Part shown: positions 1 to 52,055 of the stretch, piece after piece
How the letters are laid out: every line of letters starts with the position of its first letter
How positions within the stretch are numbered: the stretch's first letter is position 1
Notes under the pieces: generated by a model
Seen by the model: only the letters and a program-made list of their open reading frames with translations
Database searches by the model: none
What the model was told of the DNA's origin: nothing
Made by a program: the position numbers and the translations under genes
NCBI GenBank assembly: GCA_965644295.1
Contig: CBFFRP010000257.1
Span: 1-52,077 of the forward strand
Source: Paraphysomonas bandaiensis
Lineage: Eukaryota > Protista > Chrysophyceae
Direction of reading: 5' to 3'
DNA length: 52,077 nt

Positions 1-16
1 TGTATACACATGTATC

Positions 17-2643
17 ATACATACATACATACATACATACATACATACATACATACATACATACATACATACATACATACATACATACATACATACATAC
101 ATACATACATACATACATACATACATACATACATACATACATACATACATACATACATACATACATACATACATACATACATACATACATACATACATAC
201 ATACATACATACATACATACATACATACATACATACATACATACATACATACATACATACATACATACATACATACATACATACATACATACATACATAC
301 ATACATACATACATACATACATACATACATACATACATACATACATACATACATACATACATACATACATACATACATACATACATACATACATACATAC
401 ATACATACATACATACATACATACATACATACATACATACATACATACATACATACATACATACATACATACATACATACATACATACATACATACATAC
501 ATACATACATACATACATACATACATACATACATACATACATACATACATACATACATACATACATACATACATACATACATACATACATACATACATAC
601 ATACATACATACATACATACATACATACATACATACATACATACATACATACATACATACATACATACATACATACATACATACATACATACATACATAC
701 ATACATACATACATACATACATACATACATACATACATACATACATACATACATACATACATACATACATACATACATACATACATACATACATACATAC
801 ATACATACATACATACATACATACATACATACATACATACATACATACATACATACATACATACATACATACATACATACATACATACATACATACATAC
901 ATACATACATACATACATACATACATACATACATACATACATACATACATACATACATACATACATACATACATACATACATACATACATACATACATAC
1001 ATACATACATACATACATACATACATACATACATACATACATACATACATACATACATACATACATACATACATACATACATACATACATACATACATAC
1101 ATACATACATACATACATACATACATACATACATACATACATACATACATACATACATACATACATACATACATACATACATACATACATACATACATAC
1201 ATACATACATACATACATACATACATACATACATACATACATACATACATACATACATACATACATACATACATACATACATACATACATACATACATAC
1301 ATACATACATACATACATACATACATACATACATACATACATACATACATACATACATACATACATACATACATACATACATACATACATACATACATAC
1401 ATACATACATACATACATACATACATACATACATACATACATACATACATACATACATACATACATACATACATACATACATACATACATACATACATAC
1501 ATACATACATACATACATACATACATACATACATACATACATACATACATACATACATACATACATACATACATACATACATACATACATACATACATAC
1601 ATACATACATACATACATACATACATACATACATACATACATACATACATACATACATACATACATACATACATACATACATACATACATACATACATAC
1701 ATACATACATACATACATACATACATACATACATACATACATACATACATACATACATACATACATACATACATACATACATACATACATACATACATAC
1801 ATACATACATACATACATACATACATACATACATACATACATACATACATACATACATACATACATACATACATACATACATACATACATACATACATAC
1901 ATACATACAAACATACATACGTATATACATACATACATACATACATACATACATACATACATACATACATACATACATACATACATACATACATACATAC
2001 ATACATACATACATACATACATACATACATACATACACATACATACATACATACATACATACATACATACATACATACATACTATACGTACGTACATACA
2101 TACATACATACATACATACATACATACATACATACATACATACATACATACATACATACATACATACATACATACATACATACATACATACATACATACA
2201 TACATACATACATACATACATACATACATACATACATACATACATACATACATACATACATACATACATACATACATACATACATACATACATACATACA
2301 TACATACATACATACATACATACATACATACATACATACATACATACATACATACATACATACATACATACATACATACATACATACATACATACATACA
2401 TACATACATACATACATACATACATACATACATACATACATACATACATACATACATACATACATACATACATACATACATACATACATACATACATACA
2501 TACATACATACATACATACATACATACATACATACATACATACATACATACATACATACATACATACATACATACATACATACATACATACATACATACA
2601 TACATACATACATACATACATACATACATACATACATACATAC
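17..2643. repeat. (ATAC)n tetranucleotide microsatellite, ~2.6 kb
   Basis: Near-perfect ATAC/TACA repeat with only a few interruptions around 1908-1925 and 2035-2095. The YIHT/MYVC ORFs are translations of this repeat. Confidence 0.99.
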
Positions 2644-2727
2644 AGGGAGGTGTGTGGTATGTGGTAGGTGGAACTTTGCATAGTTTTAGAACAGAGCGGG
2701 TGTCAGTCACTCTGGATTATTTGGAGA

Positions 2728-9680: not shown

Positions 9681-9868
9681 TGTTCATTGTTTATGTAAAG
9701 GCAGTTATTTAATGGCCCCGTAAACATGACCCTTGCGTCTGGGTACGCAGCGTGTGACTATCATTGTAACTATAACTCCTTCTTCAAATAATATTTACAG
9801 GATCGCTTTTAGTGGTGGAAGATCAAGAAGCTATTCTCGCAGCTTAATAAATGAGAGCTGCATTATTA

Positions 9869-10433
9869 CGCTGCTCTCATTGCGCTGCTCTCATTGCGCT
9901 GCTCTCATTGCACTGCTCTCATTACGCTGCTCTCATTACGCTGCTCTCATTGCACTGCTCTCATTGCGCTGCTCTCATTACGCTGCTCTCATTACGCTGC
10001 TCTCATTGCGCTGCTCTCATTACGCTGCTCTCATTACGCTGCTCTCATTACGCTGCTCTCATTGCACTGCTCTCATTGCACTGCTCTCATTACGCTGCTC
10101 TCATTACGCTGCTCTCATTGCGCTGCTCTCATTACGCTGCTCTCATTACGCTGCTCTCATTGCACTGCTCTCATTGCACTGCTCTCATTACGCTGCTCTC
10201 ATTACGCTGCTCTCATTGCACTGCTCTCATTGCACTGCTCTCATTGCGCTGCTCTCATTACGCTGCTCTCATTGAGCTGCTCTCATTGCGCTGCTCTCAT
10301 TACGCTGCTCTCATTGCACTGCTCTCATTACGCTGCTCTCATTACGCTGCTCTCATTGCGCTGCTCTCATTGCACTGCTCTCATTGCGCTGCTCTCATTA
10401 CGCTGCTCTCATTGAGCTGCTCTCATTGCGCTG
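9869..10433. repeat. 13-bp minisatellite (CTGCTCTCATTRCR), ~43 units
   Basis: Tandem 13-mers with variant endings ACG/GCG/GCA/GAG. They generate the spurious 'RCSHYAALITLLSL' ORFs. Confidence 0.97.
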
Positions 10434-10803: not shown

Positions 10804-10897
10804 TTCCTTGTCGGGGAATCGAACCCCGGTCTCCCGCGATCTGAGAGATCACAGGACGCTTGACAGGCGGGTATACTGACCACTATACTAACAAGGA
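10804..10897 (-). tRNA. tRNA-Asp(GUC) with 22-nt intron at the canonical 37/38 site (intron 10839-10860)
   Basis: Reverse complement TCCTTGTTAGTATAGTGGTCAGTATACCCGCCTGTCA[AGCGTCCTGTGATCTCTCAGAT]CGCGGGAGACCGGGGTTCGATTCCCCGACAAGGAA folds as a full cloverleaf. A/B boxes are present and an oligo-T terminator follows. Confidence 0.95.
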
Positions 10898-12807: not shown

Positions 12808-12901
12808 TTCCTTGTCGGGGAATCGAACCCCGGTCTCCCGCGATCTGAGAGATCACAGGACGCTTGACAGGCGGGTATACTGACCACTATACTAACAAGG
12901 A
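12808..12901 (-). tRNA. tRNA-Asp(GUC), second identical copy (intron 12843-12864)
   Basis: Identical to 10804-10897 including the intron; has its own T-run terminator. Confidence 0.95.
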
Positions 12902-24227: not shown

Positions 24228-27200
24228 ATGGAGAAGACTGAGTATGGACTCTTATACGACGGAGCCGATCGTCCTACCAAGAAACAACGATATGGCGTCC
24301 TGGCTCTGATATTTATCATGCTTATTTTGATCATTCTTCTTTTTATTCTGTACGCGAATGATGATGACGACAACAGCAAGAAGGTGCGACGTGTTTAATG
24401 AACTGAACGACAGTGTGTGTAATGATAGCGTGGTCCTTCTTGTTAGGTGTACATCGCAGACACGATATCATCTGTGAACGCAGAGCAAGCTATTTCAGCT
24501 TCTGCTATAGGGTATGCGCTGTCATTGACAGGAACTGGAAAATCAATTCTTGGGGGCGGAACATCTGTCTATAAAGATGTTACCATTATGTCTACTTTAT
24601 GCCCAAAGTTCGTCAATATTGATTCCATATTTGAGGATTCATTTGTATCTACTGCGGCAGATACAACAAAAGGTTGGGGCCTGTAAATATACACAAATAA
24701 ATGATGTATTGTAATGGTGTATTGTATCTCTTACCTTCGATATCAAGGTTTATGTAGTATTTCATGGACTTACAGAATATATGTATGCAGGAACTACGAC
24801 AGTTAGTCTTCTCTCTTCAACTTCTCCGAAAGATGTGTCTCTCAGTTCATCTGCTGATTTTGATGGGGATGTGTATGACATAGCTACCTTGGATGCAGCG
24901 AATGGCGTATTCGCCATGATCAATCAAGATGTTAGCCAGACTGAAGATGATGCCACAATTGCTGCAGGTTGAACATGACTCTAGATATAGAAGAGATGAG
25001 TTACATATATGGCATATTAATATTCACATTGCAATGAGGAAACGTGATGTCATAGTGCAATCGTGCTGATAACTGCCATCCATTTTCTGAGCAATGATTT
25101 TGACAATGATATATGGTGAAAATTGTTTTGCGTGGTGTAGTTCGTGTGTATGTTATTAGGTTTTCTGAACTGTGCATTGCAATGAGGAAACGTGATGTCA
25201 TAGTGCAATCGTGCTGATAACTGCCATCCATTTTCTGAGCAATGATTTTGACAATGATATATGGTGAAAATTGTTTTGCGTGGTGTAGTTCGTGTATATG
25301 TTATTAGGTTTTCTGAACTGTGCATTGCAATGAGGAAACGTGATGTCATAGTGCAATCGTGCTGATAACTGCCATCCATTTTCTGAGCAATGATTTTGAC
25401 AATGATATATGGTGAAAATTGTTTTGCGTGGTGTAGTTCGTGTATATGTTATTAGGTTTTCTGAACTGTGCATTGCAATGAGGAAACGTGATGTCATAGT
25501 GCAATCGTGCTGATAACTGCCATCCATTTTCTGAGCAATGATTTTGACAATGATATATGATGAAAATTGTTTTGCGTGGTGTAGTTCGTGTATATGTTAT
25601 TAGGTTTTCTGAACTGTGCATTGCAATGAGGAAACGTGATGTCATAGTGCAATCGTGCTGATAACTGCCATCCATTTTCTGAGCAATATAGAGTCTGTTG
25701 TGCGTTCTGTGGTACCGGCATCGTCACTGTTGCTGATATGTTTTCTATTTAGGGGTTGTGTCAACTGATGGCACAATTACGTTCGGGACCCCGGCTGTGT
25801 ATGGGGGCGTTTATTCACTCTCTCCCGCCATCACCCGTCTTTCGGACAATTCATTTGCGGTGTGTTACTTCGATAACACAGATGCTGGTGCGCCAGTTGC
25901 TATCACAAGATATGGTAAGTCTCATTACCTACGTGATAGTTATGCACGAATCGCGTATCTACATATAGTTAAGGGCAAATATTTTACAGCTCTGGATATA
26001 TATAATTTTTCTTTGCATGTGTATATATCTGCGTCTGTTCCACTAAACTCTATCCACAGGTGTCGTGGACAGTGCCACTCTTGCTGTGTCCCTTTCTCCT
26101 GAGGTTGTATTTGCGGATAATACTCAGTATGGTGTGCACTTTACCGTCGTCGGTCTCTCAGCTACGTCGTACGTTATAGGATATTATAATGGCACTCAAT
26201 TTAGTGACGAAAATGTTGCATATGGTCCGTTACAAGTAATGTCGGTCAATATAGACGGCGCCATTGATGGTGAAACTGAAGCCAATGGAAATGTTGTTTT
26301 GGGCAACCCCAGTACATTAGATATCAAAGTAGCTTTTGACATTGCTTCTGCTCGCGTGAGCGAAACTTCAGCGATTTTGACATATGCGGAGATGTCTTCT
26401 AATTTTGGAATCACCTCTACACTCGTATCACTTGATAGCGATGGGTCCGTTTCTTTCGGGTCATCTTTAGCTATGACTTCGGGAAGAGCAATATATTATG
26501 TTCAAAATGGCTTGTTAATGGATCTCGATGTAGTGGTAATGGGAAACTCTGAAAGTGGCTCGAATGGAGCATCTGCAAAATTTGCAGTGATGTATAGTGA
26601 CATCACGAATAACGGAAAATTGACCACTACTGTAGGAATGGTACGTCAATATTGTCGTAGCAATGTACATGCATTTTATCATGAGCTAAATATACTGCTG
26701 TGTGTATATAGATCACACGATCTGCAGAACTTATCCGTGCATCCCCGGATTTCATCTTAAACTCTGGCAACGCTGACCCGGATACCATGTACACATGGGC
26801 GGCTCTTGCACCATCCGCTGCTTCCACCGCAACGGATGGGACAGTTGCACTAATTTCGGCCATAACACCAATGACATGCAATGCTGTGGACGTAACTGTC
26901 AGGTAATTACATCTATTGAGTAAAATGCAAAAAATCCTACTACAGAACGCCTCAGCCAATTACAGCACCCTCAGTCTTGATGTGGTGCTATATATATTAT
27001 TGACGTGTTTAACGATGCACGATGTGTTGTGCGATACATGTGGCTAATGATTGAGTACGACCTGAGACGCTGAAGTATGGTGTCGATAATTGTGTTATTA
27101 TACGAATGAAGCCACGTTATCTCTTGTTCTGACCAATTTATGTTGATATATATGAAGGTGCATGTTGTGTTGTGCGATACATGTGGCTAATGATTGAGTA

Positions 27201-28476
27201 CGACCTGAGACGCTGAAGTATGGTGTCGATAATTGTGTTATTATACGAATGAAGCCACGTTATCTCTTGTTCTGACCAATTTATGTTGATATATATGAAG
27301 GTGCATGTTGTGTTGTGCGATACATGTGGCTAATGATTGAGTACGACCTGAGACGCTGAAGTATGGTGTCGATAATTGTGTTATTATACGAATGAAGCCA
27401 CGTTATCTCTTGTTCTGACCAATTTATGTTGATATATATGAAGGTGCATGTTGTGTTGTGCGATACATGTGGCTAATGATTGAGTACGACCTGAGACGCT
27501 GAAGTATGGTGTCGATAATTGTGTTATTATACGAATGAAGCCACGTTATCTCTTGTTCTGACCAATTTATGTTGATATATATGAAGGTGCATGTTGTGTT
27601 GTGCGATACATGTGGCTAATGATTGAGTACGACCTGAGACGCTGAAGTATGGTGTCGATAATTGTGTTATTATACGAATGAAGCCACGTTATCTCTTGTT
27701 CTGACCAATTTATGTTGATATATATGAAGGTGCATGTTGTGTTGTGCGATACATGTGGCTAATGATTGAGTACGACCTGAGACGCTGAAGTATGGTGTCG
27801 ATAATTGTGTTATTATACGAATGAAGCCACGTTATCTCTTGTTCCGACCAATTTATGTTGATATATGTGAAGGTGCATGTTGTGTTGTGCGATACATGTG
27901 GCTAATGATTGAGTACGACCTGAGACGCTGAAGTATGGTGTCGATAATTGTGTTATTATACGAATGAAGCCACGTTATCTCTTGTTCCGACCAATTTATG
28001 TTGATATATGTGAAGGTGCATGTTGTGTTGTGCGATACATGTGGCTAATGATTGAGTACGACCTGAGACGCTGAAGTATGGTGTCGATAATTGTGTTATT
28101 ATACGAATGAAGCCATGTTATTACTGACATTCCATAATTGTTTGATGGTTGTTGTTGTATTACATTCAGGTTATCGGTCATGGATATTTTGCCTGCACCA
28201 GTTGGATTGGTCTACTCGAGCACCGATTCCCAGAAAAAGGGCGATGTAATTTTTTCTGGCACTATGAGTGGATATTCTAATCTTGTCACTGGAGCGATGT
28301 ATTACACCAATACGTTAGGAGAAATTCTTGGAGGAGATTTGTACTATGGCTCACCTACCGGAGTATATGATTCATATTATGAGCATTCATCCAGCAATAC
28401 ACTTCTGGATGCTTCGACTTCACTGGTTGGCATTGCCATCAGCCCTGATACTTTGCTCCTGAAGATGCACGGTTAG
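24228..28476 (+). CDS. Type II membrane protein (~604 aa, 7 exons) with beta-rich repeats; host gene of the two intronic arrays
   Basis: Exons 24228-24383, 24447-24672, 24776-24967, 25753-25914, 26060-26640, 26712-26902, 28170-28476 give one open frame. N-terminal TM segment GVLALIFIMLILIILLFILYA. Confidence 0.8.
25028..25687 (+). ncRNA. Tandem array of 5 putative box C/D snoRNAs (68 nt each, 148-bp period) in intron 3
   Basis: Units start at 25028, 25176, 25324, 25472, 25620. Each has terminal stem ATTGC/GCAAT, C box ATGAGGA and D box CTGA preceded by GCCATCCATTTT, complementary to the conserved LSU rRNA segment GAAAAUGGAUGGC (recalled, not searched). Confidence 0.8.
27040..28116 (+). ncRNA. 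Tandem array of 8 putative box C/D snoRNAs (76 nt each, 143-bp period) in intron 6
   Basis: Units start at 27040+143n up to 28041. Each has terminal stem GTGGCT/AGCCAC, C-like ATGATTG, guide TGAGTACGAC + D' CTGA (complementary to LSU rRNA GGUCGUACUCA, recalled) and D-like ATGA. Boxes are less canonical than in the first array. Confidence 0.62.
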
Positions 28477-51464: not shown

Positions 51465-51570
51465 TAGTGTTAGTGTTAGGGTTAGTGTCATTCGATTGCT
51501 AACCCCAACCCTAATCCTAGCCCCAATCTAATCGAATTAGATTAGGGTTAGGGTTACGGTTAGGGTTAGG
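51465..51570. repeat. Degenerate subtelomeric telomere-like repeats in both orientations
   Basis: TTAGTG/TTAGGG units, then CCCTAA-like units, then TTAGGG units. Confidence 0.8.
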
Positions 51571-51907: not shown

Positions 51908-52055
51908 TTAGGGTTAGGGTTAGGGTTAGGGTTAGGGTTAGGGTTATGGTTAGGGTTAGGGTTAGGGTTAGGGTTAGGGTTAGGGTTAGGGTTAGGGTTA
52001 GGGTTAGGGTTAGGGTTAGGGTTAGGGTTAGGGTTAGGGTTAGGGTTAGGGTTAG
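51908..52055 (+). repeat. Telomere (TTAGGG)n, ~24 units
   Basis: G-rich strand points toward the sequence end; one TTATGG variant. Confidence 0.97.

What the first reader, a model, noticed from the sequence alone, without database searches (positions are those of the whole stretch)
25028..25687. Intronic 'minisatellite' that appears to be 5 tandem box C/D snoRNA genes
Seen: intron 3 of the 24228-28476 gene holds a 148-bp tandem repeat that begins and ends on a complete 68-nt module (5 modules, 4 spacers), on the host-gene strand. Each module has a 5-bp terminal stem ATTGC/GCAAT, C box ATGAGGA (25034-25040) and D box CTGA (25087-25090) preceded by GCCATCCATTTT. The two substitutions I found between units are both in spacers. 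Established: this is box C/D snoRNA architecture, and GAAAAUGGAUGGC is a conserved LSU rRNA segment (from memory). Inference: the D+5 rule predicts 2'-O-methylation of the U in GAAAAU*GG, and a single snoRNA was recently amplified within one intron. Intronic snoRNAs are usually one per intron, so a homo-polycistronic intron would need endonucleolytic processing.
Basis: partly seen in the sequence, partly recalled or inferred. Interest (0 to 1): 0.8.

Follow-up and report, generated by a model that had tools for sequence, protein, structure and literature searches.

The report
Five tandem snoRNA genes in an intron
The 148-bp "minisatellite" in one spliced intron of a protein-coding gene is five identical copies of a small guide RNA gene predicted to direct methylation of one uridine in large-subunit ribosomal RNA; it is real, but it is a small example of something this genome does in many places.

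Summary
Window 25027-25688 holds five identical 70-nt modules and four 78-nt spacers, and both substitutions lie in spacers.

- **Box C/D features.** Each module has a 6-bp terminal stem, C box AUGAGGA and D box CUGA. A 13-bp antisense element abuts the D box and matches this organism's own LSU rRNA. The D+5 rule points to the U of GAAAAU*GG.
- **Intron setting.** RNA contigs from three studies show the array lies in a spliced GT..AG intron (24968-25752) on the host strand.
- **Copy number.** Unitig depths in a separate DNA run reproduce 5 modules, 3 spacers with A and 1 with G.
- **Uniqueness.** This array is the genome's only source of the guide.
- **Relatives of the RNA.** Two metagenome contigs carry box C/D RNAs with the same guide. 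One shares the C box and has a covarying stem. The best Rfam match is vertebrate SNORD123, below threshold, with the same guide.
- **Host gene orthologue.** A colinear orthologue of the host gene has the same intron at about 47 nt, with no snoRNA.
- **Second array.** Intron 6 holds a second array of 8 x 76-nt modules.

The mature RNA and the methylation are not shown. This scan had already noted tandem snoRNA arrays on other DNA of this genome. I re-checked two: U14-like (about 57 copies) and U24 (at least 29 copies). This is a new member of a known kind, of moderate interest.

The parts
24228..28476 (+). Host protein-coding gene with 7 exons: 24228-24383, 24447-24672, 24791-24967, 25753-25914, 26060-26640, 26712-26902, 28170-28476. 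It encodes a protein of unknown function with a hydrophobic N-terminal segment.
   Evidence: Six GT..AG joints appear in RNA contigs of runs X8, X13 and X16, from three studies. The reading frame is continuous across all joints by my arithmetic. No Pfam family matches any exon.
24968..25752 (+). Intron 3 (785 nt), which holds array 1. There are 59 nt from the 5' splice site to the first module and 64 nt from the last module to the 3' splice site.
   Evidence: Joint 24965>25751 (cut +2, GT..AG) is seen in X8, X13 and X16. Sequence.
25027..25688 (+). Array 1: five 70-nt box C/D modules and four 78-nt spacers, period 148.
   Evidence: Depth ratios in DNA run X4.
25027..25096 (+). Module 1. Modules 2-5 at 25175-25244, 25323-25392, 25471-25540 and 25619-25688 are identical, except that the last base of module 5 differs.
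   Evidence: Each module is a full-length but sub-threshold Rfam SNORD123 match, 29.6 bits against a gathering score of 45.
25034..25040 (+). C box AUGAGGA, one departure from RUGAUGA at position 5.
   Evidence: The same AUGAGGA occurs in the metagenome homologue L055.
25066..25069 (+). Internal CUGA, a possible D' box. No convincing C' box follows, and no target was found for the element upstream of it.
25074..25086 (+). Antisense element UGCCAUCCAUUUU: 12 Watson-Crick pairs plus 1 G-U with LSU rRNA AAAAUGGAUGGCG. The fifth position upstream of the D box pairs with U at C543:451.
25087..25090 (+). D box CUGA, followed by the 3' half of the terminal stem (GCAAUG).
26903..28169 (+). Intron 6 (1267 nt), which holds array 2.
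   Evidence: Joint 26898>28166 (cut +4, GT..AG) is seen in X8, X13 and X16.
27016..28121 (+). Array 2: period 143, 7.7 copies. It is best read as eight 76-nt box C/D-like modules (27040-27115, then every 143 nt to 28041-28116). Each has stem GUGGCU/AGCCAC, C box AUGAUUG and D box AUGA. A 10-bp element ahead of an internal CUGA matches LSU GUCGUACUCA.
   Evidence: Under this reading every substitution but one (28116, G-C to G-U in the stem) lies in a spacer. There is no Rfam match.

Best explanation
Array 1 is five head-to-tail genes for one box C/D snoRNA of about 68-70 nt. They sit in sense orientation inside intron 3 of an expressed, spliced protein-coding gene.

Shown: the intron is transcribed with the host pre-mRNA and is spliced out.

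Inferred:
- The spacers are cut by endonuclease and/or the debranched intron is trimmed by exonucleases up to each snoRNP. That snoRNP forms on the kink-turn made by the terminal stem with the C and D boxes.
- Each RNA then base-pairs through UGCCAUCCAUUUU with LSU rRNA AAAAUGGAUGGCG.
- Fibrillarin then 2'-O-methylates the U of GAAAAU*GG.
- The five copies arose by recent in-place tandem duplication, or are kept alike by unequal exchange. The effect is five guide RNAs per host transcript.

This is one case of a genome-wide habit of keeping snoRNA genes as tandem arrays.
For: - **Anatomy.** Five identical modules have a 6-bp stem, C box AUGAGGA and D box CUGA.
- **Target.** There are 13 contiguous pairs (12 Watson-Crick, 1 G-U) with the organism's own LSU rRNA, directly abutting the D box. 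A Watson-Crick run of this length was reached by 3 of 300 shuffles of the unit.
- **Uniqueness.** The guide occurs nowhere else in the 62.5-Mb genome apart from one non-rRNA chance site and the rRNA itself. BLAST and the SNORD123 model find no second locus.
- **Homologues.** L055 lies in an intron that follows an IMP-dehydrogenase-like exon (my reading of its translation). It has the identical C box, an identical 17-nt guide region plus D box, and a terminal stem of different sequence that still pairs (AUGUG/CACGU). L085 has C box AUGAUGA, the same 12-nt guide plus D box, and a diverged second copy 242 bp away.
- **Rfam.** All five modules give full-length hits to SNORD123 with the same antisense element, at 29.6 bits and E = 0.007.
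- **Splicing and strand.** The GT..AG joint is present in three RNA data sets.
- **Copy number.** Depth ratios of about 5:3:1:1 in DNA run X4 match the assembly.
- **Genome context.** A U14-like array of about 57 units and a U24 array of at least 29 units, the latter above Rfam's threshold, are confirmed here.
- **Precedent.** Several snoRNAs per intron are known in rice and Drosophila (PMC2780460).
Against: - No mature small RNA is shown. All available runs are contigs, mostly from polyA or total RNA libraries. The only RNA-library contig in the array (X8, 25445-25622, depth about 4 against about 248 for exons) spans module plus spacers. It therefore looks like unspliced precursor, or DNA carry-over.
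- The C box departs from consensus (G for U at position 5).
- There is no recognisable C' box, and no target for the D' element.
- The Rfam hit is below the gathering score.
- Folding energy of the module is not unusual (z = -1.3), as expected for C/D RNAs.
- Methylation of this U is not known to me in yeast (from memory).
- Nothing tested here shows that all five copies, rather than only the 3'-most, mature.
Confidence: 0.8

Rival explanations
1. The array is an ordinary intronic minisatellite, and its box-like motifs and rRNA complementarity are coincidence.
For: Short motifs such as CTGA and ATGA-like strings are common. The module's folding energy is unremarkable. The Rfam score is below threshold. 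That both substitutions lie in spacers is not significant (chance about 0.22).
Against: The 13-nt rRNA match is rare in shuffles (3 of 300), and it lies exactly against a CUGA that is followed by the complement of the module's 5' end. The same guide plus D box with a proper C box recurs in two unrelated metagenome contigs, one with a covarying stem. The array begins and ends on whole modules.
Confidence: 0.05
2. Only one copy is a working snoRNA gene, most plausibly the last one, which lies 64 nt from the 3' splice site. The other four would be young duplicates that are degraded with the intron, so the array would give no extra dosage.
For: In animals and fungi, intronic snoRNA maturation depends on distance to the splice sites (PMC2780460). 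Only the outer modules lie at such distances, 59 nt and 64 nt. No conserved spacer motif that could serve as a cleavage signal is shared with the other arrays. The copies are so alike that selection on each one cannot be judged.
Against: Arrays of 29 to 57 units elsewhere in the genome are hard to explain without use of the internal copies. Intronic clusters are processed in rice and Drosophila. All five modules are intact.
Confidence: 0.12
3. The copy number is an assembly artefact of a collapsed or expanded repeat.
For: Tandem repeats of 148 bp are error-prone in assemblies. The short-read contigs I could lay cannot span the array.
Against: Unitig depths in a separate DNA run fit 5 modules, 3 A-type spacers and 1 G-type spacer against single-copy flanks: 138.1, 77.7, 27.7 and 27.7.
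Confidence: 0.03

Closest known systems
SNORD123 (Rfam RF01156), a vertebrate box C/D snoRNA
   Same: It has the same overall length (70 of 70 model positions aligned without gaps). Its antisense element GCCAUCCAUUU next to the D box is the same, so it would have the same predicted LSU target uridine. Terminal stem, C box and D box are in the same places.
   Different: The score of 29.6 bits is below Rfam's gathering score of 45. The C box here is AUGAGGA, not AUGAUGA. SNORD123 is a single-copy gene in a non-coding host (SNHG18, PMC12354670). It was listed with target 'Unknown' in PMC1636440. Shared descent as opposed to convergence on one target is not established.
Intronic snoRNA gene clusters of rice and Drosophila
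   Same: Several snoRNA genes lie in one spliced intron on the host strand, so each must be released from the intron by cleavage and trimming (PMC2780460, which cites Liang et al. 2002 and Huang et al. 2005).
   Different: Here the intron holds five identical copies of one snoRNA with identical spacers, in a stramenopile-like protist. A second intron of the same gene holds another such array. I could not read the two primary papers to compare copy numbers.
Multi-copy, linked or tandem snoRNA genes of Euglena and trypanosomatids
   Same: Modification-guide snoRNA genes are kept as repeated, linked units (PMC2784804).
   Different: Those clusters are described as independent or polycistronic units, not as arrays inside an intron of a protein-coding gene.
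Other tandem snoRNA arrays in this same genome (U14-like on C434, U24 on C375)
   Same: They are near-identical head-to-tail units of one box C/D snoRNA plus a spacer (earlier scan notes).
   Different: Those arrays have 29-57 or more units. This one has 5, and its neighbour has 8. No spacer motif is shared.

Membership tests
Box C/D snoRNA (methylation guide) | C box RUGAUGA close to the 5' end | tested here: met
   AUGAGGA at 25034-25040, with one departure (G for U at position 5, which I infer would face the D-box U as G-U instead of U-U). The identical variant is in homologue L055, and AUGAUGA is in L085.
Box C/D snoRNA (methylation guide) | D box CUGA close to the 3' end | tested here: met
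   CUGA at 25087-25090 in every module.
Box C/D snoRNA (methylation guide) | Short terminal stem bringing the C and D boxes together | tested here: met
   CAUUGC/GCAAUG, 6 bp (5 bp in copy 5). The minimum-free-energy fold keeps it. L055 has AUGUG/CACGU at the same place. L085 shows no clear proximal stem.
Box C/D snoRNA (methylation guide) | Antisense element of 10 or more nt to rRNA ending next to the D or D' box, with the target at the fifth pair | tested here: met
   13 pairs with the organism's own LSU rRNA at C543:446-458. The fifth pair is at U451.
Box C/D snoRNA (methylation guide) | Accumulates as a stable small RNA bound by fibrillarin, Nop56, Nop58 and Snu13 | not testable with these tools
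   Only contigs of public runs were available. They cannot show RNA ends or small RNAs.
Box C/D snoRNA (methylation guide) | The target nucleotide is 2'-O-methylated | not testable with these tools
   This needs RiboMeth-seq, primer extension at low dNTP, or direct RNA sequencing.
SNORD123 (Rfam RF01156) | Score at or above the family's gathering score (45 bits) | tested here: not met
   29.6 bits for modules 1-4 and 25.1 bits for module 5. I therefore do not file it as a member. It has the same guide and would act on the same site.
Intronic snoRNA gene cluster | Two or more snoRNA genes in one spliced intron, in sense orientation to the host gene | tested here: met
   The intron 24968-25752 is removed at GT..AG in three RNA data sets. 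The modules are on the + strand, like the host gene.

The most novel reading that the evidence does not exclude
In this lineage, introns of an ordinary protein-coding gene would have acquired snoRNA genes and then amplified them in place. The evidence is that the same two introns are about 47 nt and empty in an orthologue. Tandem amplification inside introns would then be this organism's general way of setting guide-RNA dosage, and it would need a splicing-independent cleavage pathway for the internal copies.

A side consequence concerns vertebrate SNORD123, which was published with no known target. The shared guide suggests it is an ancient guide for the same LSU uridine. That uridine may be the human site called 28S-Um2031, though the numbering is from my memory and unverified.
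Probability: 0.3. Interest if true: 0.55.

Novelty: new member of a known kind. Interest (0 to 1): 0.4.

Why it matters
The arrays show that what looks like intronic satellite DNA can be functional RNA genes. They also give a clean natural test of how several identical snoRNAs are released from one intron.

Together with the larger arrays elsewhere in this genome, they point to copy-number amplification as a way of supplying rRNA-modification guides in a little-studied protist lineage. I found no paper that mentions both snoRNAs and Paraphysomonas, the name earlier notes give this genome.

The empty orthologous introns suggest gain in this lineage, although loss in the relative is not excluded. 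The shared guide with vertebrate SNORD123 offers a testable target for an RNA published without one.

Tried and rejected
1. **Second snoRNA in the spacer.** I looked for a second snoRNA or an rRNA-complementary element in the 78-nt spacer. No good match and no box arrangement turned up.
2. **Target for the element upstream of the internal CUGA.**
   - There is no match of 9 nt or more in the rRNA pieces I could collect.
   - There is no exact site in the whole genome, and near-matches are no more frequent than for the reversed control.
   - Three loci share one 1-mismatch variant, but they are unrelated to each other and match no RNA family.
3. **Shared spacer motif as a possible processing signal.** Local alignments among array 1, array 2, the U14 array and the U24 array are no better than shuffles.
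4. **Spacer derived from the present intron flanks.** No significant similarity.
5. **Host protein function.** No exon matches a Pfam family. The word-based protein search with exon 5 found a single relative, annotated as hypothetical.
6. **Literature search by guide or target sequence.** It returned only primer and oligonucleotide matches, nothing on snoRNAs.
7. **Published target for SNORD123.** I found none in the papers I could read.
8. **The 112-nt reading of array 2** (D box CUGA followed by CCA). I rejected it because copies 6 and 7 carry CCGA there and copy 8 lacks it, whereas the 76-nt reading is intact in all eight.

The 80 metagenome loci other than L055 and L085 lacked a C box and were treated as chance matches.

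I took no contig for human.

Exons were searched one by one, by reference.

Full report
**1. The observation**

Tandem Repeats Finder reports a 148-bp repeat at 25027-25687 with 4.5 copies, 99% matches and no indels. Read in register, it consists of five identical 70-nt modules separated by four 78-nt spacers. The modules are at 25027-25096, 25175-25244, 25323-25392, 25471-25540 and 25619-25688.

The only differences are G/A at 25148 and A/G at 25560, both in spacers, plus the last base of module 5. The array starts and ends on a whole module.

The terminal stem is 6 bp, not 5, in copies 1-4. By length, both substitutions would fall in spacers by chance about one time in five, so that detail carries little weight.

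**2. Independent support for the array**

All runs on offer were contigs, so copy number can only be read from unitig depth. I laid one DNA run (X4), whose organism label differs from that of the best holders. Its depths are:

| Piece | Depth |
|---|---|
| 69-nt module unitig | 138.1 |
| Spacer piece with the A variant | 77.7 |
| Spacer piece with the G variant | 27.7 |
| Single-copy flanks | 27.7 |

These ratios are about 5: 3: 1: 1, exactly what the assembly shows. I count this as support and not proof, because such depths are approximate.

**3. The setting**

RNA contigs from three studies give six GT..AG joints. The studies comprise one run labelled with an organism name (X8, RNA by guess) and two marine metatranscriptomes (X13, X16). 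The joints define a seven-exon gene on the + strand, and the reading frame runs through every joint to the stop at 28476.

| Intron | Coordinates |
|---|---|
| 1 | 24384-24446 |
| 2 | 24673-24790 |
| 3 | 24968-25752 |
| 4 | 25915-26059 |
| 5 | 26641-26711 |
| 6 | 26903-28169 |

Array 1 lies in intron 3. It begins 59 nt after the 5' splice site and ends 64 nt before the 3' splice site. The modules are on the host strand.

No exon matches a Pfam family, and exon 1 encodes a hydrophobic segment.

**4. What each module is**

Reading 5' to 3', each module contains:
- stem half CAUUGC, then one A;
- C box AUGAGGA;
- 25 nt, then an internal CUGA;
- UAAC;
- the antisense element UGCCAUCCAUUUU;
- D box CUGA;
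- stem half GCAAUG.

The genome's rDNA is assembled in pieces. The piece on contig C543 is an Rfam LSU match and reads AGCCCUGAAAAUGGAUGGCGCUUAAGCG. The antisense element forms 12 Watson-Crick pairs and one G-U with it, directly against the D box. The fifth pair falls on the U of GAAAAU*GG.

Against 5.5 kb of the organism's rRNA, a Watson-Crick run of this length was reached by only 3 of 300 shuffles of the unit. That figure does not yet require the run to abut a D box.

I find no second guide function. The element before the internal CUGA has no rRNA match. It has no exact genomic site, and its near-matches are at control frequency. Three identical near-matches proved unrelated to each other.

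**5. Is this the working locus?**

The 13-mer complementary to the guide occurs in the genome only in the LSU rRNA and at one non-rRNA site. The guide itself occurs only in these five modules. BLAST with the whole unit and the SNORD123 model find no other copy. If the organism uses this guide, it comes from this array.

**6. Relatives of the RNA**

Rfam at relaxed threshold gives full-length, gap-free matches of every module to SNORD123 (29.6 bits, E = 0.007, gathering score 45). The same antisense element is aligned in each.

One scan of metagenome contigs for 'ATGA, 30-55 nt, guide plus CTGA' gave 82 stretches. After filtering for a C box, two remained.
- **L055** lies in an intron that follows an IMP-dehydrogenase-like exon (my reading of its translation). 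It carries the identical C box AUGAGGA and an identical 17-nt guide region plus D box. Its terminal stem has a different sequence that still pairs (AUGUG/CACGU). One copy is visible before the contig ends.
- **L085** carries C box AUGAUGA and the same 12-nt guide plus D box. A diverged second copy (GCCCUCC...) lies 242 bp away, in what looks like a repeated exon-plus-intron unit. A U14-like hit is on the same contig.

So this guide is used by box C/D RNAs in other eukaryotes, which supports a real and fairly widespread target site.

SNORD123 was published with 'Unknown' target (PMC1636440), and I found no later assignment in the papers I could read. A human site 28S-Um2031 is mentioned in PMC8393311. 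My from-memory count places the predicted uridine near that number. I could not verify this and offer it only as a lead.

**7. Age and origin**

The word-based protein search with exon 5 found one relative, a JGI hypothetical protein with 50% identity. Its 11-kb contig, L120, carries a colinear orthologue of all seven exons at 40-60% identity.
- Intron 3 sits at the same place and phase in that orthologue but is only about 47 nt.
- The same holds for intron 6.
- Neither guide occurs anywhere on that contig, and it has no matching tandem repeat.

Together with the IMPDH-intron location of the L055 homologue, this suggests the snoRNA gene changes host genes over evolutionary time. The two arrays in this gene are then lineage-specific: a gain followed by amplification, or less simply a loss in the relative.

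The copies differ at 2 positions between spacer copies, out of 312 spacer nt. Either the amplification is very recent or the copies are kept alike by unequal exchange.

**8. The second array**

Intron 6 holds a 143-bp repeat with 7.7 copies at 27016-28121. I read it as eight 76-nt modules with these features:
- stem GUGGCU/AGCCAC;
- C box AUGAUUG paired with D box AUGA, where I infer that the U-for-G change in the C box is matched by A-for-C in the D box;
- a 10-bp element ahead of an internal CUGA that matches LSU GUCGUACUCA.

A longer 112-nt reading fails because its D box is mutated in copies 6 and 7 and absent from copy 8. There is no Rfam match. This array is the subject of a separate note of the scan, and I did not pursue it further.

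**9. Genome context**

Earlier notes of this scan report many tandem snoRNA arrays on other contigs of this genome and call it Paraphysomonas. I did not verify the name. I did re-test two of the arrays. The U14 model finds about 57 evenly spaced units on C434. The U24 model finds at least 29 units at 300-bp spacing on C375, above Rfam's threshold. The present arrays are therefore small members of a genome-wide pattern that this scan has already found on other DNA.

**10. Mechanism**

Shown:
- the sequence anatomy of the modules;
- the complementary rRNA site;
- transcription and splicing of the host gene;
- the array's position inside the removed intron.

Inferred from established box C/D biology:
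- a kink-turn forms from the stem plus the C and D boxes;
- the core proteins bind;
- each unit is released by cleavage in the spacers and exonuclease trimming;
- the fifth-pair nucleotide is methylated.

One RNA-library contig spans module 4 with both spacers at about 1.6% of exon depth. This fits an unprocessed precursor but could be DNA carry-over. I found no shared spacer motif that could serve as a cleavage signal. Whether the internal copies mature as well as the outer ones is open, and it is my main rival reading.

**11. Comparison with what is known, and verdict**

Several snoRNAs per intron are known from rice and Drosophila (PMC2780460). Multi-copy linked snoRNA genes are known from Euglena and trypanosomatids (PMC2784804).

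This is a new member of that kind, in a lineage with no snoRNA literature that I could find. It adds two points of interest: the empty orthologous introns and the shared guide with SNORD123. It does not pass Rfam's threshold for SNORD123, so I do not file it in that family.

I score interest at 0.4 rather than 0.8, because the arrangement has precedents and recurs many times in this genome.

Noticed in passing
window 27016-28121 (intron 6 of the same gene): A second tandem array, 143 bp x 7.7 copies. I read it as eight 76-nt box C/D-like modules with a non-canonical but mutually compensating C box (AUGAUUG) and D box (AUGA). A 10-bp match to LSU GUCGUACUCA lies ahead of an internal CUGA. Unitig depth in DNA run X4 suggests about 9 copies against 8 in the assembly.
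   Followed up: partly
L120:1847-1893 and L120:2912-2957: In a colinear orthologue of the host gene on a metagenome contig, introns 3 and 6 sit at the same positions but are only about 47 nt and carry no snoRNA. Intron 2 appears to be absent there.
   Followed up: partly
L085:200-560 (minus strand): A metagenome contig from another eukaryote carries two diverged copies of a snoRNA with the same guide, 242 bp apart. Each follows a similar short exon-like segment ending in GT, so it looks like a repeated exon-plus-intron snoRNA host gene. A U14-like hit lies on the same contig.
   Followed up: partly
Rfam SNORD123 consensus against LSU rRNA: The vertebrate snoRNA SNORD123 was published with an unknown target. 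Its consensus carries an 11-nt element next to its D box that is complementary to the conserved LSU segment AAAUGGAUGGC, pointing at the same uridine as here. A human site 28S-Um2031 is mentioned in PMC8393311. Whether it is the same nucleotide rests on my memory of the numbering.
   Followed up: partly
window 16-2644: A (CATA)n microsatellite of about 657 units (2.6 kb) lies at the start of the contig.
   Followed up: no
window 51542-51570 and 51908-52055: TTAGGG telomere-type repeats lie at the contig end, so the host gene is about 24 kb from a chromosome end.
   Followed up: no
window 10804-10897 and 12808-12901 (minus strand): Two tRNA-Asp(GTC) genes of 94 nt, a length that suggests an intron. 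They have identical Rfam scores and lie 2 kb apart, which suggests a local duplication. A 14-bp minisatellite of about 40 units lies nearby at 9865-10433.
   Followed up: no
G000 contigs C525, C543, C545, C516, C653: The rDNA is assembled in fragments. On C525 an LSU piece that is 99.8% identical to C543:1-419 stops just before the predicted target site and abuts an SSU gene, so it is a rearranged copy or a misjoin. Several further contigs carry partial SSU-like matches of lower score that may belong to organelles or other organisms.
   Followed up: partly
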